Counted from the stretch's first letter, positions 13,863 to 50,089 are shown. The stretch is DNA of 64,000 bases from Botryllus schlosseri (GCA_051294905.1 CM119380.1:22940001-23004000), one strand, 5' to 3'. Notes: generated by a model not told the origin, from the sequence alone. Numbers and translations are program-made.

Positions 13863-15161
13863 AATTGAGATCATGTAGCGGCAGTTGAGAACATGGGCCT
13901 GGCATGTGTGAATTGCTGGTGTCGTGTTTGCTAGGATATTGTAGATGTGGCATTCGCGTAAATGATAATTGAAAATCCATGACAGTTCTAGGCAATTACG
14001 GGGTTGTAGGATGCGATCTCCAACAATTGGGGGAGTAAACGAGGGCCAGGCCGAATGACAGCGAAGAGAGTGAGAACATAACGAGAATGACTATGAGATA
14101 GGAAGTAATGGCATATTGAGTGTTTATCGCCACAACCGTTAATTCGCACTGTTTGACTCCGTTTATTCTCGATGATAGGCTGGATTTTTCTGAATGCAAA
14201 TTGAACGTGTAAAATAATTTCCTCTTGCCACAACGCTCCTGAACCAGTAATTGGCAATCAGACCGCTGTCGTGGTTCTCGGCGTCGAAATTGGTACAAAT
14301 ATTGGATATTTGAGGCCAGTTTCAAGTCATTCTCTGCATAGTAAATGCTAACTGTTTCGTTGCAATTCACTTAATGACGACAATTGAAGACGTCGTGCCA
14401 TTGCGACAGTTAGTTGCAATCTTTCGTCAAACGAATTTGAATCACATCTTCTTCGCAATCTTGGTTTGCAGCTTGTTACTGGCACGCTTTCACAACTCAG
14501 AGCAATCAAACAACCTTGTAGTCAAAGCACCTTACAGTCACCGCACGATACAAGTTACTGCATCGCTCAAGATACAAACCAATCATGTCGGGAGTTCTGG
14601 AAAAGGTTGATTTGAACGGAGTGTCTGGCACGTGTCCATTGTATTTAAAATACTCGTTTCCTAGGTAGTTAAGACACTGAAAGGAATTTTGTATTTTTAG
14701 CACAACACGCCGTTTCAGATAGACCTCACGTTGTGTGAATAAACCAGATTGACGTCATTACGAAATGTTCGTCATTTCATAGCAATGTTATATGGTACTG
14801 CCCATAATGCAAGTCATAATGATTGATGGCGATCGCTGTGATGCATTATTTTCCTGCGAATCTAACTAAACGCCTTTTCATACCCACGCAATTGAATGGT
14901 TTTGTACCTGAGAGACCCGTGTCTGTTATGTAACCACTATTCTTCTGAGGAACACTGCAAGCCTTCGGGAAACCTCAAATTTTCACTGAATCATAAAAAA
15001 CTAAATCATACCACAATACACATCTAATACATTACCATAGATTAGTGATGTACAAAACAAACTGTGCATCAACAGAGTGGTAAAGAACAAAGCCATTAAA
15101 ATATGATTGCATGCAAAACGAAAACAATATAATGAGTATTTATTGCAAATATGCTGTTACC

Positions 15162-29745: not shown

Positions 29746-31530
29746 GCCTATATAGTATGCCTATATGGAAAGTAGATTAGCCCGGAGTTCACCGGAAATG
29801 GACAATTGGACATGGACACTGGACAATTTCACAAATAGGTATATTTGGTGCCTAGTTAGTGCATTACGGCTATGTCCCGGAATGCAACCGTTGGCTACAT
29901 AAGTGATCGAAATGTGTCCGTGACTGGCCATCCCAGTTATAAATAAATTGAGTTCAAATTTGTTTTATTACAAATACAATTTTATTTACTTCCGTCGGAC
30001 ACTGTAAACAGGCGGAACGAGAAACATCGCCATAGTGTGTCGATATTAACGACATATACAGTTTATAATCGACGTCCACATCTATATATGTACGATGATA
30101 ACTATGGAATTATGAAAAATAATAAGCGTGCGCGGATGACGGGTTACACTAGAAATGCTCTCCAACATTGATGAGGCATACTTGCGCTTGATGACGACTA
30201 TGTAGTGTACAACGAAACAATAGCGGACCAAGTGCGATTGATAATTGGCTACTCTTGGCTTCTACAATGACCTCTATTTTCAGAATCCGTCCAGTGTCCA
30301 TCGTATGAGAGATATACTCATAACCCCAAGAAACTAACGCAATGAAATCCGTTTAGGGAGAGAAGTAATTTCATGCGATTGCAAAAAGAAACATCAAAAG
30401 AAAGATCCAATCGCAGAGTAATAGGATATCGCAATCCCAATTATGCGATGTTCCCGTTCAATTTATATGCGCAGATATCAGCAATTTATCCTTTTCATGA
30501 GGGAAATTCTCAAAAGAGTCGGTCGATATACCCGATGTCGTGACCAGAGAATGCAGTTTCGAATTGAACCTATTTGTAATATCCTTCACTCACGACGACG
30601 AGATTTATGTATTTCAGTATGAGAAGTTGTCATCTGCGGTTGACTCACAAAAGTGTGCGACGCCTCTTTCCAATCCATGTTTTAAACTTAGTAGATTGAT
30701 CATTTTTTTGTATTTTACCCGCCATCTCAACCGTGTAAGCGGTGTCCTATAAATGTCTAGAAGTGGGCCGCGCTGCAAGTCGGCAGCTACGGAATAAAAA
30801 TGAAGAACATTGGCCTGGTCTAAATGACTATAGTAGTCGACAAACCCCATGAATACCTCAAAAAACAAACAAACAAACTTGAAATGGTTTTGAATTGTTC
30901 TGGAAATCAATACGTGTTCTTGATTACAGATTGGCGAAATCATATTTACATATGCTCCCGACACTCGACTATCATCGGTGACTATTCTTTGACCGCGCTC
31001 CATGCCATCCATCCATATTCAATGCTAACTCTTGAACTATTACAAACTGAAATCTAGTTAAACGAGGATTTTATGCCGCGAAAGAACAGCTGCTTCGCGT
31101 TTTGCTACGTGACTCATGGGATCAACCGGTCGGCGGTCGTATTCAAGGCTGTTGTTCGCTGCATGATTTGATGAAATCTAACTTGAGCGATGCAACCAAG
31201 TGTGCAGTATTGCCAAACCTTCCAAGAAACCACGTCGTGGACTTTGCTCGGTGGAGAATAAAGACCTGCAACTCGGATTGCTTCCCGTTTGAATATGTTT
31301 TGAGGTGTGTGCGAGTGCAAAGGTGTATTTAGGCAAGGTCCCTGTGAGACAATATAGGCAACGTTTATTATGTGTGATTCTGATTTCTTTTAACAAGACA
31401 AACCCACGTTCAACCAGCGAACGAAGATCCGTAAATTTGTAGAAAAATATATAATTTTTACAGATCGGGAAGAAGTCCATCGAATTCTATCGGCTCTGCG
31501 TACGATTCTTAACGTACGAATAGCGCAACA

Positions 31531-34500
31531 ATGAAATTAATTTTTGCATTAGGGGTGTTTCTTATTATTGTCACTCATAATGACGCAGCACCAACCGATA
31601 AAGGTGAGAATTCAAACTGAGAGCGAAGTCGATTAGTTTTGTAATCAAATCTATACATTCCAGTTGACCTGCTTGCACCTGTGATGGGATTTTGGAATTC
31701 ATTCTAGTAAGTATACAAAATGATAATGGGGTCGAAGTGGAAGAAATGAGATGAGATGAAATTTCCTATAGAACAGGGGTCACCAACCTTTTTGCAACCG
31801 AGGGCTACTTTTGCGTAATGATTGAAGCGGCGGGCTACTATTTACTCTAGGCTTACCATATTTTGGAAATGTAAAAAGAGGACATTTTTTCAGAAATTTC
31901 TGACATGCAAAACTGGAGAAGAATTCTCAAAAGTAAATTTTTCCCACTTCGTGATCGGTTGACTAAAAAAAAAATGTCTTCTTTTCGCTCAGAGCTAAAA
32001 TCACCGCTTTTCCCTCCGAAATACCCGCCGGAGCTTCACTTCTGCGGTAATTTGCGGCATATCACTCGTAATTTCCTCTAAATCTGACCTAAATTTTCAA
32101 AAAAGAAGACAAAATCTCAAAAAAGAGGACAAAAGGGCGTCCTCCGAGGACACTTTCAAAAGAGTCAAAAAAGAGGACAAGTCCTCTTAAAAGAGCCTAA
32201 TTTACTCCCGTCGTTTACCCGTACCACACTGAATTTCCGCTTTGATATTCATAGCACTGGCTATGACTGGACATCATGTTATCTGTTTCTATAGCAGTTA
32301 GTGGGAAGTCTAGCATTGTATGATATCAACTAGTGCGCTGTACTCTGGTATTTAACTTGATACTGCAATTCTGAGTGAGTGTTCCAGATGTGCATTAATT
32401 AGGCGTGTTTTGTGTTTGTTTTTGATGAAGTTCATGTCCGAAACGGCTGATTCACAACGATAAGTTGAACCATAGACGCTTGCAACCTTCATAGCTGCTG
32501 CGCATACACCACTGTACTTTTCCGTATCAACAATGCACCAAACGTTTGCTGCAGACTGAGGTGGAGGTCATTTTGCAGTGTTACAATTTCAATCTCCAAC
32601 TGTTCAGCATCCAGAAATGACAAGATTTCATTATACCGGACAGCAGCAACGATTACAGAAAGTTAGAAACATGGTATATTAAACTGTGTTGAGTGTAACA
32701 GAAACAAGCTGTGCCAAAAGATGCAATACGTAATGGGTATTATACAGATATTGAAAATCTGCTAGTACTTCACGGCTATCCGACTCCGAATAGTAATATT
32801 GTTTACTACTTTGTCATTGTCCTGGTCGTCGAGCTATCGTAACGGAACCCCCCACCATTTCAAGAAGACCATGAACGGCATTCCGTCATGTCGCCTGTAT
32901 ATAGGCAATGCGCCATATCTTGAATTTCTGGTGATTCTATCACATATATATCCATATAGCCTATTACTAATTGTAATTGAAGATATTTTTATTTTTTTTT
33001 ATATGTAAGTTACATGTTAGTGTGTTTTAAACAAGAATAGCTGAATCAATCAATCTATATAGGCCTATCTAAAAAGTCACTGGTAATAATCTGACGAATA
33101 GTAAATGCTGCTATTCCACCTATTTTTAGAATGGGCTCGCGGGCTACTCATCTTGTCCACGCGGGCTACCTGGTGCCCGCGGGCACCGGGTTGGTGACCC
33201 CTGCTATAGAATGTATTGCGTATAGACCAGGGTTGGGCAATTATTTTCCTCCGTGGGCCAAATGGGAAAAATAAATGCGTTGGCGGGCCGAGTGAAAAAT
33301 TTAGCTATATTCTACAGCGTTTTTTAATTTTATTTCTAAATGACATTGTTAATAAATGCTGCTCAGTGAATGTGTCGATATTAGGTAATGAGAAAGATTG
33401 TTCACTAAACTTCGACTTCGCACCACCCTTCTGATGCTTTCACGTCTCGCAGTTCGAGAACCAACGAACTGAAATGTATATGCAATAGTACAAAGCTTAT
33501 TTTCTTGGTCGCTGCCTTCCGAGCAGTGTGCAGCTTAAAAAGCCTTTATGTTGAGCGAAGCTTGCAGTTTTTCTGAACTTTGCCCTCCCTTGACCGAGTG
33601 TTTCGTGTTTTTGTCATAAGACCGACTTTAATTAAAATCCTTAATTTCGGCGACATGATCAGCAAAACTGAAAGGATGGGTTTACCCGTGACTCCAGTAT
33701 GCGAATATTTAGTGCTCTAAATTCTAAATCTAAACCTTCTTTGAATTTCAGTTTTCGGCTTTCCTTTTTTGGCATACCCGTTAATCCTTTATGGGTGATA
33801 GATATGATGAGTCATATAGTAATCGCGAGTACTGATTGACTTGTTTTACGAATTAAGGATTTGGAAACATATCACGCCACAAATTGAAATAAACGCTGTA
33901 TAATGCGTAATGTGACAATGTCAACAAGGAAGGTTCGAACTAAACTATATGGCAAGACTGATTTCTTGTGAACCAAATTTCTACTCATTCTTTGCCGCAT
34001 TCCCTTTATTTTGAATGTGGATTACGCATGCCGGGTACATGCAGCGTAATCGTGACATATTAATGAACAGGCTTCAGAGTAAACGAATATCTTGTTCATT
34101 TGACCCCGCCTATAGTTTTAGTCATTCAAAAAGCAAGTTTTATGTTTTGAAATCCAAGCAACCTTTCGCGGGCCGGACAGAATGGCTTCGCAGGTCGCAC
34201 TTTGTCCAGGTTATAGGTGTAGACCAGTGGTTCCCAACCTTTTTCGACTCATCGCCCCCTTTTGAAGCTCCATACCGATCATCGCCCCCCAAATATTGGG
34301 AACCGAAAAAATGAGTATACAAACTGGGATCACCGGCGAGTTGACTAATAACAAAAAAGTCAACTTTTCGGCTCGACGGCTCGAAATTATATTAGCTATA
34401 CCCTATTTCAGGTACTGTTTGGTGAGTCACCGTATTTAGCCTAAACGCGCGAAGCGCGACAAATTTATATAATTCATGGTATAATTCATGGTCAATATGG

Positions 34501-35803
34501 CCGGGAATTGCATATATATTGCTATCAATTTTTTATCCTCTCTCTGCTCACGTAATCAGATTTACCGGTAGAGCTGAGTGTGGTGTGCTGGAAAAGGTAG
34601 GACCCCTAAATAATAATTAAACATCTTGGGGCGGACTCGTTGTTGTATGATGCTTTTTCGTGACCTCCTATATCTGCTATGTCAAAATATATGGAAATCG
34701 CTAAAACGTACCAAACTAAAAGACGCACATGATTTCAAATTGGTATTTCTTAACCGGAAAAAAAATGTTCTCTGCGGGATGGCATTTGTCCCGTAGGGTT
34801 CAGATCGCCAGGACATATGACAATAGTAAATTGCGCGCAGCGCAAAATTTTTTGAAAAAGTTGCATAAATTTCTAAACGGTCCTGACTCTATATAGCCGT
34901 TTTAACGCGCCATCGCCACGCTATCGCCCCTTCATTGTTTTCGCCCCCTATCGCCCCTTCGTCCGTTTTCGCCCCCTATCGCCCCCTTCGTTATTTTCGC
35001 CCCCCTAGACCGCCAAATCGCCCCCTGGGGGGCGATATCGCCCACGTTGGGAACCACTGGTGTAGACTGTAGGTAGATTATGGGAAATAATATTGATGGA
35101 ATACTATATAGTGTGCTGGATTGATTGTTCAAGTTTGATCGCACACTGCAAATATATATGGTGAGGCAATAATGAATCTAGTGACCAACACCTACGGCGG
35201 AGATGTTAATCGTCTCGCATAGTTGTATAAGACTTCGCGCGAGGATTATCCCGAGTCGTCTGGTGAAACTTTGAATCCAGTAAAGTATAGGTTGCCACGG
35301 TTAACAGTTTTAATCAAACGATTAGCATTTTCCGGAAAAGCTAACTTTATGATCTCCGTCCTTAGAGGGGAATTCTGGGGTCGACCCGACTCGGGCACAT
35401 CTCGATGAAGTCGCTACGCAGGGTTATGTTAATCGCTGTCTCAAATCGTTGGAATCTCAATAATAACATCGTTCGTTTCGTCTCAAACAGCAACAAAATC
35501 TCTCAATATTCCACGGCAACAGTGGAAACGGTCAAGGACTTGTATTCGGAACACGCTTCCGACACCGTCGACACGATCAAGACGACCTACCAGTCTCGGC
35601 GTGAAGAGGGAAGGAATGCGTTGACCGCTGCGGCTGTTGCCGCCAAAGATCTGATTCAGAATCACGCCGGGGAAGCGGTCCAGGAGCTTTCCGATACTTA
35701 CACTGAAAATCTTGAATCCGCGAGAAGTCAGGCGAAAAGGAAAAGAAAAAGAAAGGGAAGGAAAGGAAGTAAAGGAAAGAAGCGACGAAGAAATAGAGAA
35801 TAA
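31531..35803 (+). CDS. Gene A: secreted apolipoprotein-like amphipathic protein with polybasic tail, 142 aa, 3 coding exons
   Basis: Exons 31531-31603 (MKLIFALGVFLIIVTHNDAAPTDK, G|gtgaga, phase 1), 31664-31706 (ttccag|VDLLAPVMGFWNSF TA|gtaagt, phase 2), 35491-35803 (caaacag|C completes Tyr; NKISQYSTATVETVKDLYSEHAS...KRKRKRKGRKGSKGKKRRRNRE*). AATAAA overlaps the stop (35799-35804). Alternative acceptors at 35365 and 35420 would create stops. Confidence 0.75.
31774..33203 (-). mobile_element. Degraded hAT element in gene A intron 2
   Basis: TIRs caggggtcaccaacc / ggttggtgacccctg; perfect TSD ctatagaa; minus-strand remnant EQLEIEIVTLQND...AAMKVASVYGSTYRCESAVSDMNFIKNKHKTRL (dimerization domain). 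Confidence 0.9.
33228..34216 (-). mobile_element. Degraded hAT element with transposase N-terminal remnant
   Basis: Left TIR cagggttgggcaa, decayed right TIR; TSD gtatagac / gtgtagac; minus-strand remnant resembling the GKP.C...K..N..R.Y..KH zinc-finger region. Confidence 0.7.
34225..35059. mobile_element. hAT MITE with internal 27-bp tandem repeats
   Basis: TIRs cagtggttcccaac / gttgggaaccactg; perfect TSD gtgtagac; tatcgcccccttc...ttttcgccccc repeats at about 34922-35005. Confidence 0.9.
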
Positions 35804-38570
35804 AACTTTACATTATATATAGTTTTAGTTGACAAATATACATTCTCATCTCGTCATCACACCCGGGTTTTTGAATCATGTATCGCAATGTCCAAATCGC
35901 CGGGTTAGGATTTCAGTTATACTACATTCGGACCTGCCAACGTCGTAAATATCATGACTCTGAAGCTGTCAACGTATTGACGTAAATAAGTATAAAGTAT
36001 GCTAACGTAAGGGTGATCTTATGTATCGAATTTTGTGCATTATTATGCTATTGCTTAATGCATGCGAAAACCGCTTTTTTGAGATAGGAACTGTTGAAAT
36101 TTTCCATGCCTATTGCCCATTATGGTCACAGTATGTTGAAATATCGATGATCAATATATCTGTAACCATTTTCTCGCTTTTTACGTTACAATAAAGACCA
36201 CCGATTTCGTCTGTGATTGCATAATCAAATCCCGGGTGGATGAATTTCTTTCAGGGATAATTAGTTCAGTGTACTTTGGATTAGGATCCAACCGTGATAG
36301 TAAATCCTTGGTGGCAACTGGTTGGGTATTGACAATCAAGTGAACGGGTCTCGGGATATCCAAAGCGGCATCAGTAATGATTTGTTAGTTACGTGGTGAC
36401 GACATGAGCTAACTGACAGCTTCATTGAATTACTGCCGTTTGTCCAGGCAGCCTGCCTATCTTGTTTTCGTATTTGTAGTCGATCTGACAGTTTGACATA
36501 CTACTAAAATGAACCGCAGACTACAGACTGCTCTTTGCTAACATTGCCGCGTCGTGTTGCTTACAACTGACCCGTCGAGTTCACTCAGAATCAATCTATA
36601 GCAGCGCCTCTACGTACAATCAGGACCGTAACTGCCGCACCCCAAACCCCCTAGAAGGGAGCCCAAAATTATTTCGTGAATTACCATGAATTATAGTTTT
36701 TTCTGGAAATTTAAACAACTTTTTCGCGATTTAATATTACCAAATATCTTGATTATTGGGTACCGTTCCCCAGGAAACATCCGCATGATGATGATCAAGA
36801 TGATGATCATAATGAAATGAACATTTCGGCGTCTCCATTACTGCGCCACGACGCACTGAGACAAATGAAGTTTTAGGCCCGTGTAACATGTGACTCCGAG
36901 AAATTATATATGCATGTTTTCATTGTTTAGTTGTCCATAAGCGTTAAATGGCTGGAGCCTAATGTAGGCCTACCTGTCCTGGAAATCTGGACCCCACAAG
37001 ACAAGTGACATACCGCAATGAAGAAATACCAATTTAAAATCGTGTGAGTCTTTTATTTTAGTGCGTTTGAGTGATTTCAATATCTCTTGACATAGCAGAC
37101 CGAGATCACGAAATAACATAATGTAACGAAGTTATTATACCAACGGGTCCGCCCGAAGCTGTTTGATTTTTATTTACGGGCCCTAGATTTTTTCCAAGAC
37201 ACCTCCCTCAGCTCTACCGGTAAATCTGATTATGTAAGCAGAGACAGAATAAAAATTTGATAGCAATATACATGCATTTCCCGAAAATATTGACCGATTC
37301 ATGAATTATAGTATCGATCGAAGCTGACTCACTACACGTTCGAGAGATCTCTCTGATAAGCAGGGGTCAAATGTACAAGCTGGTGGGGGTCTGGGGGGTG
37401 AAGGCCCCAGAAGTTTTGTTCATCACCTCGGTTAATATCGATTTTGATTCGTAGTGAGATAAGTCTTGTTTTCAAAACCTAATCCGGTTAACTCTTATCG
37501 GAGGACTTAAAAAAGGCCATCATAATATAAATGGCCCGCGCACTTTTCATAAATCTAGTGTGGCCCTCTGGCCGAAAAGATTGGCCGCCCCTGAAAAAGG
37601 CTGTTCGGGTACATAAGCAAATGTTTCTCCTCATTTAAACGTTGATAATCGATTTATTGATTACTTTTGGAGTAGAACAGAGTGGAGTTGACATGTGTTC
37701 CGCTTGCGATATCTGTCTGTAATGATTCTCGAGGAAACCAGCGCGAGAGCTCAAAAATATTGGATTGGTACTTTTTGCGAGATGTTTATAAATAGCGCAT
37801 AGTACATCATTGCATCCGCGTAGCTAGGGTGTCTGGGGGGTCGCGTTTAAGAACTGCTGTGCTGGATGGTGGTCCGGTAACCTCGAGCCCTGATTAGTAT
37901 TTAGCATTTCAAATACGTTACAGCCTTGTTCATCCTTATTTCAACATGCCAGAGGTGGACAACATACAGGCGTACGAAGTTAAACAATAATTATGCGGCC
38001 TTTAACATATAATTAAATTAGCGAGTGTTGGCGACCGTCAATATGCAATATGAATTTACAATTTGGTTCCCAAATCTTTGAGTGAATTTAAACTTGAAAA
38101 TTTTGTTCACGCTTGGCGCGATTCGGGTGACTAGGATTTTTCTTTTTTAATATAATAGTGTCATATGAGTCCCACCGTACAAATGCGAACCACAAAGGAG
38201 TATGGCGCACCCCATCAAGAAACACCAAGTTGGAATCGTGTGCGTATGACGAATGAAGGTTTTTCTTGTACGTTTGGCCGCATCCAATACAATATATATT
38301 TCGAATATGCCATCAATCCTGATGGGAGGTCAAAAATAACAACATGCAACAAGGCGATTAATAAATATCGGAAGACGCATCATCATTCATTTTGTTCCCA
38401 AAATTTTCGAAGACACCCCATCCTTCAGCTCTGTCGTTTAATCCGATCACGTGGGCTAAGAGTGGATAAATATTTGGCAGTAACATATGAAACAACCAAT
38501 ATTATCAACGAAATAAATTTTCCAGATGTAAAAAATTTTCGCGCACCGCGTGACTAGAAATGGAATCCAG

Positions 38571-39153
38571 CAGGGTTGTAACCAAGTCACAAGGCTCCGA
38601 GTCAAAAGTCAATCTCACTTTTATAGTTTTGACTCGAGTCAAGTCGAGTAGTTTTCAATTCACCACCAAGTCAAGTCCCAGACCAAGTCAGCGAGCAGAG
38701 GGTTGATTCTGACATTTCTGAGTCATGCCATTATTATGACTCGAGTCCGAGTCCAAGTCATTCTGTTGACTGCTCATTTCCTGTTAAAGTCTTATTAAAT
38801 CCAACTATTTGTAACTCTGTTTGGTGATATCTAATGGTTCGCATTTATTATAAACTAATTTTCCTCGCTTTTAGCAGTTTCGGGTCGCATTTTCAAGTAC
38901 CAGGATCAATAGACGAAATCCCAATAGTGTGGTTACTTTACTATTCTTCGAAATTACAATGAAATGTCGATCTTGGCCGTATGAGTCTCGAGTCATATGA
39001 CTTGGTTCGAATCATGCGCGTTGACTCGAGTCCAAGTCGAGTCAATAAGCAGATTTACTCGAGTCGAGTCATTTCCGTATTTTGAGAAAATGACTCGAGT
39101 CAATCGAGTCATCAGAAAATCGTGTCATCATGACTCGAGCCTTTACAACCCTG
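38571..39153 (+). mobile_element. Complete GACTCGAGTC-rich hAT MITE (583 bp)
   Basis: TIRs cagggttgtaa / ttacaaccctg; TSD gaatccag / aaatccag (7/8). Confidence 0.85.
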
Positions 39154-39537
39154 AAATCCAGATAACTTCTAATATTTATACTTGCGATTTTAGTGCATAG
39201 ATGGTAAGCCTGCGGGGATGTTCTGCTGCTACAATTAAAAGCTTTTATATGCAAGGTATATCTTAAGAAATCAGTGATGGCACAAAGCACGACAAAGTCC
39301 CTCCGCGGTGCGAAGTTTCTAGGAGCCAATTTAACATGAGTATATGACGTCCAGATTGACCATAACGAGTCTCCACCGGAATGCGGCATTATGCTACAGT
39401 ATATATGTAATCAAAGCACGGCCATGAATAACAAATAGATTGAACACCCCTGGATTAAGCTTACCATGCGCAATCAGTGAATTATCTGTTCAGGGGTGTA
39501 CGTGTTTCGAGTAAACGCTAAAAGGGTGTACCACGAC

Positions 39538-40344
39538 TAGGGCTGGGCACAATGATTCGAGTACTCGAATCTGAATCGAGTATTAATTTTAATGATTCGA
39601 GTCGAGTAGTAAAAGATGATTTTTTCGAGTACTGAAATTGTACGCTTCTCGCCACTGAACTAATACTGTTGCCCTACCTCGCCCAGACATTGCTTCATTG
39701 ATCATTTGCTACCATCGTTTAATTTTTCTTCTATTTTTTTTTTTTTAACTACCGTAACATTTTTTACAGCCAGACTGTTTAGAGTCAAGTGTACCTGTTT
39801 GATGCTGGTGTGATCAGACTAGATGACCTTCACGGTCTTCTCGATCATTCCTATCTAATACCGAATACTGTGTATGCATATTTTCTGTACCACCACCACT
39901 GCCGTGTGTTATGTATTTTGGTTTGATGAAAATAAAGACTCTCTCTCTCTCTCTCTCTCTCAACGAAAATTATAGTTTCGATACTAATTTTCACTATTGA
40001 AGCCTTGAAACCTTGATCGGTCGTATCGTAGCATACGAAACATATAATACAAAGCTACGAACGTTATTGGAAATAGCACATTTCCGAAGTCATGATCATC
40101 TCACAACATTGTCACCAAGTGCAATGAAATCGGTATGGTCGAAAAAATACCAAAGTATTATTGATGTGATGGATAGTAGGCATTATATTCTTTGTGGTCG
40201 CATAAAAGGTACATAATTGAACTTTAATATATTACATTCTGTTATGACGTCATAATGAGTGATACTCGATTACTCGACTCGACTCGAAGCATAATACGTG
40301 ATTCAGAATCGAATCACTCAGGTACTCGATTTTGCCCAGCCCTA
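39538..40344. mobile_element. hAT MITE (TAGGGCTGGGCA ends) with nested retroelement 3' end and (CT)n tail
   Basis: TIRs tagggctgggca / tgcccagcccta; perfect TSD accacgac; the nested 39780-39960 segment has a reverse copy at about 49530-49720. Confidence 0.9.
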
Positions 40345-42650
40345 ACCACGACGAATAAATTTGAAGAGCACTGCTAACTGATTGTTGGATAATAATCTGA
40401 CAAGCGAAGTGACACAATGCGATATCGAATTAGCAAACCGACGACGTAATGTGAACTGTGAGTCGTGTAGTTGGGAAGGTCAGCGTGTATCAGAGCAAAT
40501 ACAATCTCTTATTGATTTAGCTGTCATGTGTTTTCCGCCCATGCCTATACGTTGAATTGGGGATGTGTATAGTAATTTCTTACGAAAACCTCAGTATGAA
40601 GAGTGGTAATAAGATTAGAAACAAGTCGCCAATTGCATCAGCGACCGTTTGGGGCATGTATTTATAAATTTGACTCGAAAGGGCCACACCAACCATGAAC
40701 CTCACCGCACGCCACTCGGTTAAGTTCATATCGCACCTGGTGCTGTATTTGCGTTATATTGACGTGAACTGTTTGTGTTAGTGATAATGGTATTGATTAC
40801 ACAATTCACAACCTGCTGCACTTTAGTTGCGGACAAACTCTGATGCAAGGGAAGGCGACTTCTTGAGCAAGCCTGATTCGCTGACGGGCATTAAAATGTC
40901 TCTGGAAGAAACTTCCCAAGCCTACAATCCCCCTGCTATACACACAGCTAGCTCAAAGGTCATTTTCCAAAATCCAATGGAGACAATAAATAATCAAACT
41001 GTGACGCAACGGGCATCCGAAACTGCATGCATAGCGTGAAATCGTTAAGACTCTTGGCCTGTGGTTATTTGATAACCAATACACTTATTCACACATGCTC
41101 CTTCCGATAAATATTTGCTAGTTGGTGGAATCTGGTGCAACGAGGATCCGATTTCAACGACCTTCGTACTCTTCCAATGTATTACAAAGACATTCGGATC
41201 CTCAGATACCTAATAAACAGGGAGTTGCTGCTCATAATTAGCATTCATCAACTTGCGTTCGAGATAAAGATAGCGTGTGGACTCAGAACTGATATTGTGA
41301 CCTATGAAATTGGGATTTCCTTATATTTGCTTCAATGAATCCCGTAGAGATTCATGTTCTTGTATGAAAATATTCAAGAGTCACTGTGGTGTAGGACGAT
41401 GTACCGCTATTAAGCAAAACATACTTTAGCCAATTAGTAGTCAGGTCGCTGTATTTTTCTATTGCGTGGTCGGGCTATGGTGAAGCTACGAATATGTGCA
41501 GGACAGACATTGCATTGTATGGTACGGTATAGTATACTGAATGCTTTCTGTATCTAACACGGAAATATGCAGATGTGTTATTGAAAAAATTCCCATACTT
41601 CCATATTCGACTACTTTTGTCGGCACCACGATGAATTTGCCACTGATCTTTTGTTTGCGCATCTTTATTAGGTTCCGCGTAAAGCTTACGAAGCCTTGGT
41701 CTATATTCATTTCATGAACCTCCATTTCACGTATTCATGGTACTTTCTTGCAGAAGGTGAAATTTTCGACCGACTTGTATTTAAAAGCTACTCGAAAATT
41801 CGTGTTTACAGCCACGTTGATTTACGTGTACTAAACGTCTGTTGACATATAATAGCTTTCTGTAGCAGCATGATCTAATGATCAATTTTCCCATGGTGAT
41901 TACTGGTTTGTAAATTTCTTTAATGAGAATGAGTTTTGCAGTTGTCCTTCGTCTGTACCAATTATGATAATGAATCATCAAAGGACTTAAACACTCTACC
42001 AATACGATTGGAGTTGACGAAAGGCTTCGTTGCAATGCGATTCACTGCAGTATTGATAAAGTATTCTGTAACTCCGATTTTGAATTGCTTGGTAGCCTAT
42101 TAAAGGATTGACTTACAATGCAAATGCATTACGCTGATCTAGCAAAGAATATAGGCCTACCACACCTTAAACCTTGATATTCGTGAGGGACAATTGCAAT
42201 TAGATTAAGAGTCACTCAACATCAATTGTCCAACTATATTATTTTGTTTGCGGGAGACAGGGCAAACGTTGCTACATTGGTGCATAAAGTATTTGCGGAA
42301 GATAATATATGAAACAAGGACCTAGGATTATCTTCCCATCGGAGTTGGTTTAAGTAACAGTGCGTCCGAAATATTATTGTGCCAGAAAACGCATTATATT
42401 TATCACACTGAAGGTATTATAATACCTTCTATAGAAAGAAAGTATGGAAACTGTATCAACTATATGGTATAGAAGGATGTCAGTATGGTATGGAAAGTGT
42501 TAGCGAAATGTAGAATATGAAAATTGCTCGTTCCATACCATTATGCCATTTTCCTACCTGCACAATGCGAATAACCCCAACTGATCTTCGCAGGAAAGGT
42601 CGTTTGCTAATATCTCTAACGAGTTATTTTATTGCGGTACTGCAAGGAAG

Positions 42651-43324
42651 ATGAAATCCTACATCGCTATCTGCCTCATTGTCATTTTGGCCATTGCAGC
42701 CGTAGAGTGCTCACCTGCAGCGGGTAAGTCTAACTGTACAAGTGCACTTTCACAATTTGCAAATGGATCAACGTGCAGGCATTTGTTGTTTCCTATAGTC
42801 TTCGTTTCTGTTATAATATTTCAGGCAATAACGATGCCTTGATTCTGTTGGTCTGCTGTTCGATTTTTCCTAACAGTAAACTATCTGCGCAAACAACGCA
42901 ATTCGAACAATAAATAGAATTGAGGTGTAATGTGGTTCATGCCCCTGACTTTTTGTATGCATTTATAGAGACAATTGCAGCCGAATACGGATCATGCTGG
43001 AGTTTTTGTACAGTATCTATGCCGCTATTTATATTATATGCTTATCATTTAGGCGCGCCGGACTGGGGGGAATGGATGTCTTCTGTAAAGACGTACGCGA
43101 CGTAAGTGATTACTGATAGTCCAGAAGATTTCAATTATAGCACTATGTTTCGATAGGCCTGGTAGAATTATCATTGTCAGATTTGTTAAATATCCAATTC
43201 TCTTCTCAGTGCTGTTGCCCAAACCGGGAAGACATACGGCACGGCAGCGATTGAGAAGGTCAAGGAGGGCTGGGCCGGAGTGACCACGACTTTCAATGGT
43301 CACTTGGCGAGTAATCAAGAGTAA
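42651..43324 (+). CDS. Gene B copy 1: secreted apolipoprotein-C-like peptide, 78 aa, 3 coding exons
   Basis: Exons 42651-42723 (MKSYIAICLIVILAIAAVECSPAA, G|gtaagt, phase 1), 43053-43101 (catttag|GAPDWGEWMSSVKTYA AC|gtaagt, phase 2), 43210-43324 (ttctcag|T AVAQTGKTYGTAAIEKVKEGWAGVTTTFNGHLASNQE*); AATAAA at 43456-43461. Confidence 0.85.
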
Positions 43325-46300
43325 TTCCAATGGACTGCAAACCGAAAGGGTCAAGACATATTTCAAACTGACGTCTTCTTCATTGTATTCTGTAATTTTG
43401 AAATTTATTACAGTATTTTTTCGGTATTGAACAAGTTATCGCATTTTACCGGCCCAATAAACTTTTCAATTAGAAATAACATTCTTTCGAATTCGGGATA
43501 AGCATCGCAGAACTTTCGACAGGTTAAACAATTTTAGCGTAGCATGAATTCATAACTTTGGAAAGGTTGAACTGCGGCCCATATTTGACTGCGTATTTTG
43601 GAGATGAAAATAATTTAGAATGAAACATATTATTAAAAAAGCACGTGGATCTGGAACTACAAATATTTACAGCCAATCTTCACTCAATGCCCTTAAAACC
43701 GACAAGAAATATTAACACTAATTCTACATACTTAAGTATCGTCAATGGTGACCCCCTTCTCAAAGGACTCCGCATGGAGAAGTCCAACAATTGGCCACCA
43801 ATCGGCAGTATCATTGTTACTCCTGCCAATATATTTGAATTTGGAACCACTGTATGGTCGGAAATTTGACCATGTGTGGATTACATTCGAATTTGATCTA
43901 CGACTTTCGGGTGTAATTTGATTTGAAATTGAACTTTGAAGCTAAATTCTAGAACAGGGCTTGGAGCAGCTACCATGAATTGTGCGTTATCTGTCTGCAG
44001 GGATGGGCAAAACCTAGGACCAGAGTGATTCGATTTCAAATCGAGTGTTACGCTCCGATTCGAGTGTTCGAGTATCACTCATTATGAAGTCAAAACAGTA
44101 TGGATGACTTGGAAAGCTCAAATATGTGACTTTAATGTTATCACAAAATGACAGTTACACAACAACGAAGATAATTTGGTATTTTTCGGCCATGTCTATG
44201 CTTTAGATGAGAGGTGTCAACCATACGGACCGTCAGACGGTTTCATCCGACCCTCGAAGCAATTTTGAGTAGATTGGAAAATGTTTGTATTATCCAGCAG
44301 CCAGCACATATCTAACATATGTTTAGAATTTCAGTCAGAAATACACCCATTATATAATCCCCCAAGACAGCAAATGTTATAACGTACGTTTTGGTCGTTG
44401 CCTAGCTCAAACGATAGTTCGTTATATTTATTTGATTAGAGTTTTGGCTGTAACAATTTTAGGCTTGTCGAGTAGCTTGCCAACTCAAATTGAGTCTACC
44501 ACCTCACTTTCTTTGCTTCCTATAATCCGAGCCTTCCCCTGAGACCCGGTCAAATGTAACTCAACAAATTACAGAATAGGATAACAAATTTACTACATAG
44601 AAAGATCACGTCAACGTCGAGGCAATAGTCACAATAGCGGTTACCAACAGTTAACTCTCTAGGCTCTTAAACTTGCAATCTAAATCAATAAAATACAATC
44701 ACCTGAATGATGGCCGAAACTTACAATACTTATACAATACAAATAATGCCCTATGGTACATCATATCCCTAAATTTAGCCTAACTTCAATCACCGATCCA
44801 ACGATATTACAAGCAACAAAGCGACTAAACTTCAACAAGTGGCTATCAAGACACGAGGGGAAAATCCAACCAGAGAGGGCACTACTAAGCTGTGAGGCTC
44901 ACAATCACTTGACCATTTCTCGTGCTACAAATGTCGAGTATGTTCATTGTTCATAGGCCACATTATAACCACCCAACAGCGGTCTTATGGTCACCATTCT
45001 AGTCACCATTAGGAACCAAGTCGCTAACATTGATACCCAATTCCGGAAAAACAAAAACCGCACACTGATTTCAGAGGCTTATGAAAAATATTTGCTAGTT
45101 GGTGGAATCTGGTGCAACGAGGATCCGATTTCAACGACCTTCGTACTCTTCCAATGTATTACAAAGACATTCGGATCCTCAGATACCTAATAAACAGGGA
45201 GTTGCTGCTCATAATTAGCATTCATCAACTTGCGTTCGAGATAAAGATAGCGTGTGGACTCAGAACTGATATTGTGACCTATGAAATTGGGATTTCCTTA
45301 TATTTGCTTCAATGAATCCCGTAGAGATTCATGTTCTTGTATGAAAATATTCAAGAGTCACTGTGGTGTAGGACGATGTACCGCTATTAAGCAAAACATA
45401 CTTTAGCCAATTAGTAGTCAGGTCGCTGTATTTTTCTATTGCGTGGTCGGGCTATGGTGAAGCTACGAATATGTGCAGGACAGACATTGCATTGTATGGT
45501 ACGGTATAGTATACTGAATGCTTTCTGTATCTAACACGGAAATATGCAGATGTGTTATTGAAAAAATTCCCATACTTCCATATTCGACTACTTTTGTCGG
45601 CACCACGATGAATTTGCCACTGATCTTTTGTTTGCGCATCTTTATTAGGTTCCGCGTAAAGCTTACGAAGCCTTGGTCTATATTCATTTCATGAACCTCC
45701 ATTTCACGTATTCATGGTACTTTCTTGCAGAAGGTGAAATTTTCGACCGACTTGTATTTAAAAGCTACTCGAAAATTCGTGTTTACAGCCACGTTGATTT
45801 ACGTGTACTAAACGTCTGTTGACATATAATAGCTTTCTGTAGCAGCATGATCTAATGATCAATTTTCCCATGGTGATTACTGGTTTGTAAATTTCTTTAA
45901 TGAGAATGAGTTTTGCAGTTGTCCTTCGTCTGTACCAATTATGATAATGAATCATCAAAGGACTTAAACACTCTACCAATACGATTGGAGTTGACGAAAG
46001 GCTTCGTTGCAATGCGATTCACTGCAGTATTGATAAAGTATTCTGTAACTCCGATTTTGAATTGCTTGGTAGCCTATTAAAGGATTGACTTACAATGCAA
46101 ATGCATTACGCTGATCTAGCAAAGAATATAGGCCTACCACACCTTAAACCTTGATATTCGTGAGGGACAATTGCAATTAGATTAAGAGTCACTCAACATC
46201 AATTGTCCAACTATATTATTTTGTTTGCGGGAGACAGGGCAAACGTTGCTACATTGGTGCATAAAGTATTTGCGGAAGATAATATATGAAACAAGGACCT

Positions 46301-46627
46301 AGGATTATCTTCCCATCGGAGTTGGTTTAAGTAACAGTGCGTCCGAAATATTATTGTGCCAGAAAACGCATTATATTTATCACACTGAAGGTATTATAAT
46401 ACCTTCTATAGAAAGAAAGTATGGAAACTGTATCAACTATATGGTATAGAAGGATGTCAGTATGGTATGGAAAGTGTTAGCGAAATGTAGAATATGAAAA
46501 TTGCTCGTTCCATACCATTATGCCATTTTCCTACCTGCACAATGCGAATAACCCCAACTGATCTTCGCAGGAAAGGTCGTTTGCTAATATCTCTAACGAG
46601 TTATTTTATTGCGGTACTGCAAGGAAG

Positions 46628-47301
46628 ATGAAATCCTACATCGCTATCTGCCTCATTGTCATTTTGGCCATTGCAGCCGTAGAGTGCTCACCTGCAGCGG
46701 GTAAGTCTAACTGTACAAGTGCACTTTCACAATTTGCAAATGGATCAACGTGCAGGCATTTGTTGTTTCCTATAGTCTTCGTTTCTGTTATAATATTTCA
46801 GGCAATAACGATGCCTTGATTCTGTTGGTCTGCTGTTCGATTTTTCCTAACAGTAAACTATCTGCGCAAACAACGCAATTCGAACAATAAATAGAATTGA
46901 GGTGTAATGTGGTTCATGCCCCTGACTTTTTGTATGCATTTATAGAGACAATTGCAGCCGAATACGGATCATGCTGGAGTTTTTGTACAGTATCTATGCC
47001 GCTATTTATATTATATGCTTATCATTTAGGCGCGCCGGACTGGGGGGAATGGATGTCTTCTGTAAAGACGTACGCGACGTAAGTGATTACTGATAGTCCA
47101 GAAGATTTCAATTATAGCACTATGTTTCGATAGGCCTGGTAGAATTATCATTGTCAGATTTGTTAAATATCCAATTCTCTTCTCAGTGCTGTTGCCCAAA
47201 CCGGGAAGACATACGGCACGGCAGCGATTGAGAAGGTCAAGGAGGGCTGGGCCGGAGTGACCACGACTTTCAATGGTCACTTGGCGAGTAATCAAGAGTA
47301 A
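46628..47301 (+). CDS. Gene B copy 2 (identical, in second duplication unit)
   Basis: Exons 46628-46700, 47030-47078, 47187-47301 with the same splice sites; AATAAA at 47433-47438. Confidence 0.8.
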
Positions 47302-50089
47302 TTCCAATGGACTGCAAACCGAAAGGGTCAAGACATATTTCAAACTGACGTCTTCTTCATTGTATTCTGTAATTTTGAAATTTATTACAGTATTTTTTCG
47401 GTATTGAACAAGTTATCGCATTTTACCGGCCCAATAAACTTTTCAATTAGAAATAACATTCTTTCGAATTCGGGATAAGCATCGCAGAACTTTCGACAGG
47501 TTAAACAATTTTAGCGTAGCATGAATTCATAACTTTGGAAAGGTTGAACTGCGGCCCATATTTGACTGCGTATTTTGGAGATGAAAATAATTTAGAATGA
47601 AACATATTATTAAAAAAGCACGTGGATCTGGAACTACAAATATTTACAGCCAATCTTCACTCAATGCCCTTAAAACCGACAAGAAATATTAACACTAATT
47701 CTACATACTTAAGTATCGTCAATGGTGACCCCCTTCTCAAAGGACTCCGCATGGAGAAGTCCAACAATTGGCCACCAATCGGCAGTATCATTGTTACTCC
47801 TGCCAATATATTTGAATTTGGAACCACTGTATGGTCGGAAATTTGACCATGTGTGGATTACATTCGAATTTGATCTACGACTTTCGGGTGTAATTTGATT
47901 TGAAATTGAACTTTGAAGCTAAATTCTAGAACAGGGCTTGGAGCAGCTACCATGAATTGTGCGTTATCTGTCTGCAGGGATGGGCAAAACCTAGGACCAG
48001 AGTGATTCGATTTCAAATCGAGTGTTACGCTCCGATTCGAGTGTTCGAGTATCACTCATTATGAAGTCAAAACAGTATGGATGACTTGGAAAGCTCAAAT
48101 ATGTGACTTTAATGTTATCACAAAATGACAGTTACACAACAACGAAGATAATTTGGTATTTTTCGGCCATGTCTATGCTTTAGATGAGAGGTGTCAACCA
48201 TACGGACCGTCAGACGGTTTCATCCGACCCTCGAAGCAATTTTGAGTAGATTGGAAAATGTTTGTATTATCCAGCAGCCAGCACATATCTAACATATGTT
48301 TAGAATTTCAGTCAGAAATACACCCATTATATAATCCCCCAAGACAGCAAATGTTATAACGTACGTTTTGGTCGTTGCCTAGCTCAAACGATAGTTCGTT
48401 ATATTTATTTGATTAGAGTTTTGGCTGTAACAATTTTAGGCTTGTCGAGTAGCTTGCCAACTCAAATTGAGTCTACCACCTCACTTTCTTTGCTTCCTAT
48501 AATCCGAGCCTTCCCCTGAGACCCGGTCAAATGTAACTCAACAAATTACAGAATAGGATAACAAATTTACTACATAGAAAGATCACGTCAACGTCGAGGC
48601 AATAGTCACAATAGCGGTTACCAACAGTTAACTCTCTAGGCTCTTAAACTTGCAATCTAAATCAATAAAATACAATCACCTGAATGATGGCCGAAACTTA
48701 CAATACTTATACAATACAAATAATGCCCTATGGTACATCATATCCCTAAATTTAGCCTAACTTCAATCACCGATCCAACGATATTACAAGCAACAAAGCG
48801 ACTAAACTTCAACAAGTGGCTATCAAGACACGAGGGGAAAATCCAACCAGAGAGGGCACTACTAAGCTGTGAGGCTCACAATCACTTGACCATTTCTCGT
48901 GCTACAAATGTCGAGTATGTTCATTGTTCATAGGCCACATTATAACCACCCAACAGCGGTCTTATGGTCACCATTCTAGTCACCATTAGGAACCAAGTCG
49001 CTAACATTGATACCCAATTCCGGAAAAACAAAAACCGCACACTGATTTCAGAGGCTTATGAAAAATGGACCAAAAAGCAGTTCGTCGCACAAGCGAAAAC
49101 GCCAATGCGAAACCGTTATACGCAGGTAGTATTGACAATAAATTAGTCACAAAAATATAATTGAAATATCTGTTGTCGCAGTGCTGCATCAGTTTCGCCT
49201 TAACAGGCTCCCTGCCTCCACAGAAATCCGAATCATGATTTACAATTCATGAACCAAATCCCAACGTTCGCGTTTACAGCTAATCTCCTGTATACTATTC
49301 CTCACAACACATGCCACATACTCAGGGCTAACGCCAGACTACGACTAAAACAAAGGAAGATCAGAACTATGCCAACCTATGTCGTCGTTAGAGCCACTGT
49401 TTTAGCGGTTTATGACTGTATTCAACCTGTCAATCATCGTACTATTGTTAATTCCGTTCTTTGCGAATAATGGTGTTACTAAAATAGAACCCCTACCCAG
49501 TACCCTATCATCCGTAGGCTAATATGATGTAATAGAGAGAGAGAGTCTTTTAGAGAGAGTCTTTATTTTTCATCAAACCAAATACATAACACTCGGCAGT
49601 GGTGGTGGTACAGAAAATATGCATGCACAGTATTCGGTATTAGATAGGAATGATCGATAAGACCGTGAGGGTCATCTAGTCTGACTATCATGCATCCAGG
49701 CTTGTGACAAACAAGGGCATAGATTATGAGGTAACATTTTGGAATAATTTGGCCAATCTGACCTGCGCGCGATCTGAAAGTTTGAATCCGGCCCGGGACG
49801 CAAGTTGAATTCGACACCCCTGCTTTTGATGATGGGATGGTTTCAGGGCTCCCACGGCGAGAGGAATGCATCAAAACTATAATTGTTGTTGATTAAATAA
49901 CTCTTGGTGAAAAGGATTGCATAAATTTCAGTACTCGAAAACACATATCTGATATCTCACTGTTGGACTAGAATCGTTACAATTAATACTGTATTCGTAT
50001 CGTCGAGAATCGCTCTTGCTTCCGCGCACTGTGCTGTCTGTACTTCTCAGTTGCCATCATATATTCCAGAGAGCCATAGTTTCGAGTGT

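What the first reader, a model, noticed from the sequence alone, without database searches (positions are those of the whole stretch)
31531..47301. Cluster of exchangeable-apolipoprotein-like genes in an apparent invertebrate chordate
Seen in sequence: gene A and gene B (two copies) are invisible as single ORFs but share one architecture: a 73-nt first coding exon (24 codons plus G) encoding the signal peptide, a phase-1 intron, a short 43/49-nt Trp-containing exon, a phase-2 intron, and a last exon of amphipathic helix, with poly(A) signals. Established: vertebrate APOA1/A2/C1/C2/C3/E genes have this phase-1 then phase-2 coding-intron pattern, encode 11-mer amphipathic helices and sit in tandem clusters; the family is generally treated as vertebrate-specific. 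By-eye resemblances: B APDWGEWMSSVKTY...TAAIEKVKE to apoC-I (APD...AAIEHIKQ) and apoA-II (YGKDLMEKVK); A GFWNSF...VKDLYSEHAS to apoC-II (SYWES...LRDLYSKST). Inference: these may be pre-vertebrate members of the family, implying an earlier origin of this lipid-transport system. Caveat: intron 1 falls just after the signal peptide rather than within it, and low-complexity helices can converge.
Basis: partly seen in the sequence, partly recalled or inferred. Interest (0 to 1): 0.9.

Follow-up and report, generated by a model that had tools for sequence, protein, structure and literature searches.

The report
Secreted amphipathic-helix gene pair, ascidian
Three small hidden genes (one single, one duplicated) are real and encode secreted proteins that should form long two-faced helices able to sit on fat or membrane surfaces, much as blood apolipoproteins do, but nothing tested here shows they are relatives of the vertebrate apolipoproteins.

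Summary
Gene B and its identical copy (+3977) have the same plan: a 73-nt signal exon in phase 1, a 49-nt Trp exon in phase 2, and a helical last exon.

A and B are probably paralogues (p about 0.005). Both are significantly amphipathic and are predicted to be long helices.

Descent from vertebrate exchangeable apolipoproteins is not supported:
- ApoC-I, ApoC-II and ApoA-II profiles give no hit.
- A scores 18.5 bits against PF01442, whose cut-off is 90, and A's only relative (62% identical) does not hit it.
- The A profile finds no apolipoprotein in the PDB.
- A has no 5'UTR intron and no 33-codon block, and its repeat is 37 residues.
- A resembles alpha-synuclein at least as well as any apolipoprotein.

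Homology is not excluded either, because apoC-I and apoC-II fail the same pairwise test against each other.

Best reading: a lineage-restricted secreted protein family that binds lipid or membrane surfaces, an apolipoprotein analogue.

The parts
31448..31454 (+). TATATAA box of gene A. RNA coverage starts about 10-30 nt downstream, at roughly 31462-31480.
   Evidence: Sequence. RNA depth rises from the 31467 bin and the contig of X29 starts at 31462.
31531..31603 (+). Gene A coding exon 1: 73 nt, a signal peptide plus about 4-5 residues, ending in phase 1.
   Evidence: joint 31603|31664, GT..AG, 156 raw read mates plus 3 contigs.
31664..31706 (+). Gene A exon 2: 43 nt, a hydrophobic aromatic segment containing Trp, ending in phase 2.
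31707..35490 (+). Gene A intron 2: 3784 nt, filled with transposon-like repeats.
   Evidence: Joint 31706|35491 in 232 raw read mates plus 3 contigs. Very high repeat depths occur inside the intron.
35491..35803 (+). Gene A last coding exon. It encodes two 37-residue acidic amphipathic repeats (protein residues 47-83 and 84-120) and a polybasic tail of 22 residues (+15) from about 35738.
35804..36212 (+). Gene A 3'UTR, with AATAAA at 36190-36195.
   Evidence: Transcript contigs end at 36209-36212. Poly(A) signal.
42651..42723 (+). Gene B copy 1, coding exon 1: 73 nt, signal peptide, phase 1.
   Evidence: Splicing is inferred from consensus signals and from the RNA word share.
43053..43101 (+). 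Gene B copy 1, exon 2: 49 nt, two Trp residues, phase 2.
43210..43324 (+). Gene B copy 1, last coding exon: an Ala/Thr/Gly-rich helix with loose 11-residue repeats. AATAAA lies at 43456.
46628..47301 (+). Gene B copy 2, identical to copy 1: exons 46628-46700, 47030-47078 and 47187-47301. AATAAA lies at 47433.
41109..49066 (.). Perfect tandem duplication: a 3977-nt unit in 2.0 copies with a 4-bp overlap at the junction. It carries the two B copies.
   Evidence: Its reality in the DNA was not tested.

Best explanation
A and B are real, expressed and probably paralogous genes. They belong to a lineage-restricted family, apparently ascidian, of small secreted proteins built from amphipathic alpha-helix.

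After signal-peptide removal, A (about 122 aa) has three parts:
- a strongly hydrophobic aromatic N-terminal helix;
- two 37-residue (15+22) acidic amphipathic repeats with a small-residue Ala/Val/Thr/Leu apolar face;
- a 22-residue polybasic tail.

B (about 55-58 aa) has a Trp-rich start followed by about three loose 11-residue Ala/Thr/Gly-rich repeats.

The most likely mechanism (inferred) is that the proteins are loosely structured in solution and fold into long helices of about 11/3 periodicity. These helices lie flat on a lipid or membrane surface, as exchangeable apolipoproteins, synucleins and perilipins do. A's tail either tethers it to polyanions such as sulfated glycans or acidic lipids, or is trimmed at its many K/R-R sites.

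The proteins are best treated as functional analogues of exchangeable apolipoproteins. Common descent is not demonstrated.
For: Shown:
- Gene A is transcribed and spliced as modelled.
- The five listed coding variants of A (31551, 31566, 31575, 31578, 35671) are all synonymous by my reading, whereas the UTRs carry 11 listed variants.
- One relative, P0001, is 62% identical over 80 residues. It keeps 25 of 29 hydrophobic positions, the 37-residue repeat (z 5.7) and a basic tail.
- Mean hydrophobic moment over 18-residue windows is 0.33 for A, B and P0001, z 3.5-4.8 above shuffles.
- Acidic residues sit at the polar centre and K/R at the interface.
- AlphaFold2 predicts one continuous helix for A's last exon (pLDDT 78.6) and for B's last exon (pLDDT 85.7).
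- The only weak profile or feature hits are to lipid-surface amphipathic-repeat families: Apolipoprotein A1/A4/E for A, the Perilipin 11-mer region for P0001, and LEA_4, Phasin and Synuclein clusters in the Atlas.
- For A-B paralogy: the genes are adjacent on the same strand, have an identical 73-nt first coding exon length and the same phases, and give a local alignment p of 0.003-0.007.
Against: - There is no experimental or expression-site information.
- All profile hits are far below the family thresholds, and the Atlas scores (0.66-0.76) are in the range that shuffled proteins reach.
- The apolar faces are weak (many Ala/Thr/Gly). A soluble coiled-coil or matrix role is therefore equally compatible with the helix predictions.
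- B's splicing is not directly shown.
- B's 11-residue periodicity is only z about 2.
- The taxon (ascidian) rests on earlier unchecked notes.
Confidence: 0.5

Rival explanations
1. A and B are true pre-vertebrate members of the exchangeable apolipoprotein multigene family. They would have diverged beyond recognition by sequence but kept the phase-1/phase-2 intron pattern, tandem clustering and amphipathic repeats.
For: - The phases 1 then 2 match those of APOA1, APOE and APOC3. This is my own knowledge of their coding exon lengths: 43/157/604, 43/193/718 and 55/124/121 nt.
- The genes form a same-strand tandem cluster.
- PF01442 is the top Pfam hit for A (E 0.002), and neither reversed nor shuffled A reproduces it.
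- Real family members can be just as dissimilar: apoC-I versus apoC-II gives p 0.83 in the same test.
Against: - A scores 18.5 bits against a curated cut-off of 90.
- P0001 does not hit PF01442 at all.
- No ApoC-I, Apo-CII, ApoA-II or ApoC-III profile hit was reported at a max_evalue of 10, although HMMER's filters drop most matches above about 0.1.
- No apolipoprotein appears in the profile-versus-PDB search.
- The B-apoA-II p-value does not survive correction for 8 comparisons.
- A matches alpha-synuclein, an unrelated 11-mer family, more strongly (p 0.007 and 0.015).
- A has no 5'UTR intron.
- The intron lies after, not within, the predicted signal peptide.
- The middle exon is 14-16 codons rather than the 33-codon block.
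- The repeat unit is 37 residues, not 11 or 22.
- Phase-1 introns next to signal peptides are common in secreted-protein genes generally (my own knowledge).
Confidence: 0.12
2. The genes encode host-defence precursors. The amphipathic helices, or A's polybasic tail once released at dibasic sites, would act on microbial membranes or surfaces. This would resemble anionic-propiece plus cationic-peptide precursors.
For: - The proteins are small, secreted and lineage-restricted, and the genes are recently duplicated and polymorphic.
- A combines an acidic part (-6) with a +15 tail that has many K/R-R motifs.
- Trp-rich amphipathic N-termini are present.
Against: - B's mature peptide has net charge -1 and no dibasic sites.
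- A's tail contains no hydrophobic residue, so it is not an amphipathic cationic peptide.
- The five listed coding variants of A are all synonymous, which is unlike fast-evolving antimicrobial peptides.
- There is no hit to any antimicrobial peptide family in Pfam.
Confidence: 0.15
3. The proteins are secreted helical proteins with no lipid role. They could be coiled-coil or oligomeric components of tunic, extracellular matrix or an adhesive, or signalling proteins retained on glycans by the basic tail.
For: - A single long helix is predicted, and a fold search finds no match.
- The apolar face is weak and made of small residues.
- The polybasic C-terminal tail is of the kind that retains secreted factors on sulfated glycans (my own knowledge).
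Against: - The periodicity signal is at 100 degrees (amphipathic helix), not a clear heptad.
- Shifts 7 and 14 are not enriched in A.
- The N-terminal aromatic hydrophobic helix (moment 0.5-0.6) is typical of membrane or lipid anchoring.
Confidence: 0.18
4. Gene B, or the second B copy, is not a functional gene. The 3-exon model for B could be a chance reading, and B' could be an assembly artefact.
For: - B's joints were never laid on reads.
- The duplication is 100% identical over 3977 nt in a genome where gene A shows many SNPs.
- No relative of B was found.
Against: - All four splice sites of B are strong.
- The architecture is the same as that of the verified gene A.
- More than a dozen RNA-type runs from several studies hold 0.23-0.36 of the locus words, matching the exon-only share.
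- The exon 3 helix is predicted with confidence.
Confidence: 0.05

Closest known systems
Vertebrate small exchangeable apolipoproteins (apoC-I, apoC-II, apoA-II; also the ApoA-I/A-IV/E family, Pfam PF01442)
   Same: Both groups are secreted, small, and encoded by same-strand tandem genes. Both have three coding exons with intron phases 1 then 2, and a last exon encoding amphipathic helix with acidic residues at the polar centre and basic residues at the interface. PF01442 is A's top, sub-threshold Pfam hit.
   Different: No profile match reaches a family threshold. A has no 5'UTR intron. The first intron lies after the predicted signal cleavage site. The middle exon is 14-16 codons rather than the 33-codon block (block as described in PMC5037836 after Li et al. 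1988). A's repeat unit is 37 residues and lacks proline punctuation. A carries a polybasic tail. Lipoprotein association is unknown.
Alpha-synuclein, perilipin and LEA group-3 type 11-residue amphipathic repeat proteins
   Same: They share long uninterrupted helices of about 11/3 periodicity with small Ala/Thr/Val/Gly apolar faces. B has K-T-Y-[AG]-T-A repeats. A versus alpha-synuclein gives SW p 0.007-0.015. P0001's best Pfam hit is the perilipin 11-mer region. Synuclein, LEA_4 and Phasin clusters appear among the Atlas look-alikes.
   Different: Those families are cytosolic and lack signal peptides. All matches are below threshold, and no KTKEGV motif is present. A and B are secreted.
Insect apolipophorin III
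   Same: It is an invertebrate exchangeable apolipoprotein made only of amphipathic helices. It is the precedent for a non-vertebrate protein that works like apoA-I or apoE (my own knowledge).
   Different: ApoLp-III is a five-helix bundle of about 160 aa. No Pfam ApoLp-III hit was reported for A or B, and A is predicted as one extended helix.
Polybasic C-terminal retention tails of secreted proteins (for example long chemokine or growth-factor isoforms, and the heparin-binding cluster of apoE)
   Same: A's tail has 17 K/R in 22 residues at the extreme C-terminus of a secreted protein. Its basic character, though not its sequence, is conserved in P0001.
   Different: This is only a compositional resemblance from memory and was not tested. 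The tail is encoded by a purine-rich low-complexity tract, and its length differs between A and P0001.

Membership tests
Exchangeable apolipoprotein multigene family (ApoA-I/A-II/A-IV/C-I/C-II/C-III/E) | Sequence match to a family profile at its curated threshold | tested here: not met
   A scores 18.5 bits (E 0.002) against PF01442, whose cut-off is 90. No ApoC-I, Apo-CII, ApoC-III or ApoA-II hit was reported for A or B at a max_evalue of 10. P0001 has no apolipoprotein hit. The profile of A plus P0001 against PDB sequences finds no apolipoprotein.
Exchangeable apolipoprotein multigene family | Four-exon gene with the first intron in the 5'UTR (PMC5037836, after Li et al. 1988) | tested here: not met
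   Gene A RNA contigs run colinear from 31462/31506 (one from 31332) to the exon 1 donor. RNA depth begins about 31467, just after a TATATAA box, and no upstream joint is listed. Gene B was not tested.
Exchangeable apolipoprotein multigene family | Coding introns in phase 1 (within the signal-peptide region) and then phase 2 | tested here: inconclusive
   The phases 1 and 2 are met in A, B and B'. However, the first intron follows codon 24, which is 4-5 codons after the predicted cleavage site, whereas in APOA1, APOE and APOC3 it follows codon 14-18 inside the signal peptide (my own knowledge). Phase-1 introns beside signal peptides are common in general.
Exchangeable apolipoprotein multigene family | Common 33-codon block in the penultimate exon | tested here: not met
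   The middle exons are 43 nt (A) and 49 nt (B), that is 14-16 codons.
Exchangeable apolipoprotein multigene family | Tandem 11- or 22-residue repeats in the last exon | tested here: inconclusive
   In A the significant self-shifts are 15 (z 4.1) and 37 (z 5.9), while 11 and 22 are not significant (z 0.7 and 1.3). In P0001 the z values are 5.7 for shift 37, 3.6 for 15, 2.6 for 11 and 2.5 for 22. In B they are 1.8 for shift 11 and 2.0 for 22. The shifts 15, 22 and 37 all keep the phase of an 11/3 helix.
Exchangeable apolipoprotein multigene family | Class-A type amphipathic helices | tested here: met
   The mean hydrophobic moment is 0.33, z 3.5-4.8 above shuffles. D/E cluster at the polar centre and the few K/R sit at the interface. 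The feature is not specific to this family.
Exchangeable apolipoprotein multigene family | Reversible association with lipoprotein particles | not testable with these tools
   This needs density flotation of haemolymph or yolk with mass spectrometry, and lipid-binding assays.
Exchangeable apolipoprotein multigene family | Conserved synteny with vertebrate APO clusters | tested here: inconclusive
   Ten neighbouring ORFs gave no Pfam hit. One looks like a WD40-type exon. The neighbouring genes could not be identified.
Synuclein | Cytosolic protein with KTKEGV-type 11-mer repeats; Pfam PF01387 | tested here: not met
   A and B have signal peptides. No Pfam Synuclein hit was found. There is only pairwise similarity of A at p 0.007-0.015.
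Cationic antimicrobial peptide precursors | A cationic amphipathic mature peptide released from an anionic propiece | tested here: not met
   B's mature peptide has net charge -1 and no dibasic site. A's helical part has charge -6. A's +15 tail has no hydrophobic residues.

The most novel reading that the evidence does not exclude
A and B are the first exchangeable apolipoproteins outside vertebrates that descend from the same ancestor as apoA/C/E. They would have kept the phase-1/phase-2 gene plan and tandem arrangement. This would place the origin of the HDL-type lipid transport proteins before the tunicate-vertebrate split.
Probability: 0.1. Interest if true: 0.85.

Novelty: new variant of a known kind. 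Interest (0 to 1): 0.42.

Why it matters
The exchangeable apolipoproteins are treated as a vertebrate invention, and no tunicate counterpart turned up in the paper library. Tunicates are the closest living relatives of vertebrates. An expressed, secreted gene pair built of amphipathic helix, with the apolipoprotein intron-phase pattern, is therefore a concrete candidate. It could be the ancestor of the family or an independent invention of the same solution. Either outcome can be tested directly by flotation proteomics and lipid-binding assays. The case also shows that small multi-exon secreted genes of this kind are missing from very large protein collections: only one relative was found among 1.84 billion representatives.

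Tried and rejected
- Word-index homologue searches with A's last exon, with B and with the A+P0001 profile found nothing beyond P0001.
- The exhaustive HMMER search gave P0001 plus two spurious repeat proteins. P0002 has 29 copies of a short Y-S-S..T-V-D-T-I motif in a 6781-aa protein, and P0003 is a 565-aa repeat protein. I rejected both as composition or repeat matches.
- DNA for P0001's contig could not be fetched, and its run accession is in no paper. Its species and upstream exons are therefore unknown.
- The PDB sequence searches with A and with B gave only chance hits.
- The global hydrophobic moment over the whole protein was uninformative because the helices change register. I replaced it with sliding windows.
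- A weak tblastn hit of A at 14182-14358 on the minus strand (E 0.085) lies in an ORF with a different character, Cys- and Arg-rich with a C-terminal hydrophobic segment. I judged it to be chance.
- Foldseek with the single-helix model of A returned nothing, as expected for one helix.
Only its last exon was folded.
- Rfam found nothing in the window.
- The taxon could not be established from the window itself.

Full report
**1. Observation**

I rebuilt both gene models from the sequence.

Gene A:
- A 73-nt first coding exon (31531-31603) encodes 24 codons plus G and is followed by gtgaga.
- A 43-nt second exon (31664-31706) lies between ccag| and |gtaagt.
- A 3784-nt intron follows.
- The last coding exon (35491-35803) completes a 142-aa protein.

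Gene B:
- Its exons are 42651-42723 (73 nt), 43053-43101 (49 nt) and 43210-43324, giving a 78-aa protein.
- An identical copy lies 3977 nt downstream and ends at 47301, which is the end coordinate of the finding.

The phases are 1 then 2 in all three genes. AATAAA signals lie at 36190, 43456 and 47433.

A scan of both strands for ATG exons with a hydrophobic core ending at a donor site found the 73-nt phase-1 type only at these three places.

**2. Transcription and splicing**

RNA-type runs hold 0.46-0.81 of the sampled words of A's last exon plus 3'UTR.

I laid three RNA contig sets and one raw bulk RNA-seq run on 31300-36300. The results were:
- Both predicted joints appear as GT..AG skips: 31603|31664 and 31706|35491.
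- Each joint is present in one contig of each contig run, and in 59+97 and 107+125 raw read mates.
- Coverage begins about 31462-31480, just downstream of a TATATAA box (31448-31454). It ends at 36209-36212, about 20 nt after the AATAAA.
- No joint upstream of the ATG is listed, so A has no 5'UTR intron.
- The five listed variants inside the coding sequence (31551, 31566, 31575, 31578, 35671) are all third-position synonymous changes by my reading. The short UTRs carry eleven listed variants. This fits purifying selection on the protein.

Read laying allows one call, so B's joints are not directly verified. DNA runs hold 0.97-0.98 of the sampled words of 42500-43500, while more than a dozen RNA-type runs from several studies hold 0.23-0.36. 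By my arithmetic, exons plus about 50 nt of 5'UTR and about 150 nt of 3'UTR would give about 0.36. The data therefore fit a spliced mRNA but do not prove the exact joints.

**3. The duplication**

The segments 41109-45085 and 45086-49062 are 100% identical, with a 4-bp AAAT overlap. Gene A shows many SNPs between samples in this genome. The duplication is therefore either very recent or an assembly artefact, and I could not test which. In practice the 'cluster' holds two distinct genes.

**4. What the proteins are**

Protein A after the signal peptide has three parts:
- A hydrophobic aromatic segment (residues 25-46) has an 18-residue hydrophobic moment of 0.5-0.6.
- Two 37-residue repeats (47-83 and 84-120) share 12 of 37 identities. 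The self-shift z is 5.9 at 37 and 4.1 at 15. Each repeat is a 15+22 unit.
- A 22-residue tail carries net charge +15. The helical part has net charge -6.

Protein B has a Trp-rich start and then rows of 11 residues sharing K-T-Y-[AG]-T-A and V-K-E-G-W-A-G motifs. The 11 and 22 shifts reach only z of about 2. Its mature charge is -1.

Further properties:
- Sliding-window hydrophobic moments average 0.33 in A, B and the relative P0001, z 3.5-4.8 above shuffles.
- On helical wheels D/E sit at the centre of the polar face and the few K/R at the interface. The apolar face is made mostly of Ala, Val, Thr, Leu, Ile and Tyr.
- AlphaFold2 predicts a single continuous helix for A's last exon (with the two-sequence alignment, pLDDT 78.6). 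It also predicts one for B's last exon (pLDDT 85.7).

A and B align locally with p 0.003-0.007. Adjacency, the same strand, an identical 73-nt first coding exon and the same phases add to this. Together these make paralogy likely.

**5. Relatives**

Word-index searches found nothing for A or B. The exhaustive HMMER search of 1.84 billion representatives with A's helical part gave three hits.

One hit, P0001, is a true relative:
- It is 113 aa, comes from a Logan contig of run SRR25569784, and is 62% identical over 80 residues.
- It is an ORF that reads from an intron into the last exon.
- It keeps 25 of 29 hydrophobic positions, the 37-residue repeat (z 5.7) and a shorter basic tail.

The other two hits are repeat artefacts.

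The family therefore exists in at least one other sample, but its range is unknown. Earlier notes of this scan place the genome in the ascidians. I could not confirm that from this window.

**6. Test of the apolipoprotein reading**

Profile searches:
- For A, the top Pfam hit is PF01442 (Apolipoprotein A1/A4/E) at E 0.002 and 18.5 bits, against a curated cut-off of 90 bits.
- No ApoC-I, Apo-CII, ApoC-III, ApoA-II or ApoLp-III profile hit is reported for A or B at a max_evalue of 10. HMMER's filters drop most matches above about 0.1.
- Reversed and shuffled A do not hit PF01442, so the hit is not trivially compositional.
- The 62%-identical relative does not hit PF01442 either. Its best hit is the 11-mer region of Perilipin (E 0.055).
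- A profile of A plus P0001 finds no apolipoprotein among PDB sequences at E up to 10.
- The protein-language look-alikes are weak (0.66-0.76). They include LEA_4, Phasin and Synuclein clusters.

Pairwise tests.
- With residue shuffling most comparisons give z of about 2. That null destroys helical periodicity.
- With a null that keeps composition and local periodicity (reversed, 11-residue blocks permuted), A versus apoC-I, apoC-II and apoA-II gives p 0.19-0.88.
- Under the same null, B versus apoC-I and apoC-II gives p 0.13 and 0.28.
This does not survive correction for eight comparisons.
- As a specificity control, A versus alpha-synuclein (checked) gives p 0.007 and 0.015, better than any apolipoprotein comparison.
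- The same test also fails for apoC-I versus apoC-II (p 0.83). The absence of signal therefore does not refute homology.

Gene structure:
- The phases match those I recall for APOA1, APOE and APOC3.
- The vertebrate plan also includes a 5'UTR intron, an intron inside the signal peptide, a 33-codon block and 11/22-residue repeats, as summarised in PMC5037836 after Li et al. 1988.
- A lacks the 5'UTR intron. Its first intron follows codon 24, after the predicted cleavage site. Its middle exon has 14 codons, and its repeat unit is 37 residues.

**7. Conclusion**

The genes are real and the resemblance in kind is real: secreted, clustered, and built of amphipathic helix. Membership of the vertebrate family fails every feature that could be tested strictly.

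The weak matches scatter over several unrelated families that share only the 11/3 amphipathic helix. I therefore read A and B as a lineage-restricted family of proteins that bind lipid or membrane surfaces, working like exchangeable apolipoproteins (confidence about 0.5).

The rivals are true but unrecognisable homology (0.12), host defence (0.15), a matrix or other non-lipid role (0.18), and an artefactual gene B or B' (0.05).

No paper in the library describes exchangeable apolipoproteins in tunicates.

Noticed in passing
window 41109-49066: A perfect 2.0-copy tandem duplication of a 3977-nt unit with a 4-bp AAAT overlap at the junction. It is 100% identical even though the genome is otherwise SNP-rich. 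It is either a very recent duplication or an assembly artefact.
   Followed up: partly
window 31775-35075 (intron 2 of gene A): The intron is packed with short elements bounded by terminal inverted repeats. One example is GGGGTCACCAACC...GGTTGGTGACCCC at about 31777/33190, and another is CCAGTGGTTCCCAAC...GTTGGGAACCACTGG at about 34226/35046. Parts reach word depths of tens of thousands in RNA and DNA contig sets (34139-34305). These are high-copy MITE-like families, and some are transcribed.
   Followed up: no
window 34490-34751 and 37021-37295: Two inverted-repeat pairs (106 nt at 87% and 79 nt at 86%) flank gene A's last exon. They are probably two copies of one transposon in opposite orientation.
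   Followed up: no
window 35738-35803: A's polybasic tail is encoded by a purine-rich, AAG/AGG-like low-complexity tract, and reads seem to be cut there. The tail is 8 residues shorter in the relative P0001, which suggests that its length changes by slippage.
   Followed up: partly
window 13996-14370 (-): A 124-aa ORF has a weak tblastn match to A's repeats (E 0.085, 31% over 68 aa) and a C-terminal hydrophobic segment. I judged the match to be chance. Its transcription was not checked.
   Followed up: partly
window 55555-55827 (+): An ORF looks like one exon of a WD40 or beta-propeller protein (Atlas named hits 0.86-0.88, all in the WD40 clan). It probably belongs to a larger gene spanning about 53-64 kb whose identity would be needed for a synteny test.
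   Followed up: partly
window 31479-31578: Samples differ from the assembly at eight positions within 100 nt around A's start. Four are in the 5'UTR and four are synonymous changes in the signal peptide. All eight are fixed in the raw RNA run laid, which points to high population diversity or a divergent strain.
   Followed up: no
window 39938-39971: A (CT)n microsatellite of about 15 units lies between genes A and B.
   Followed up: no
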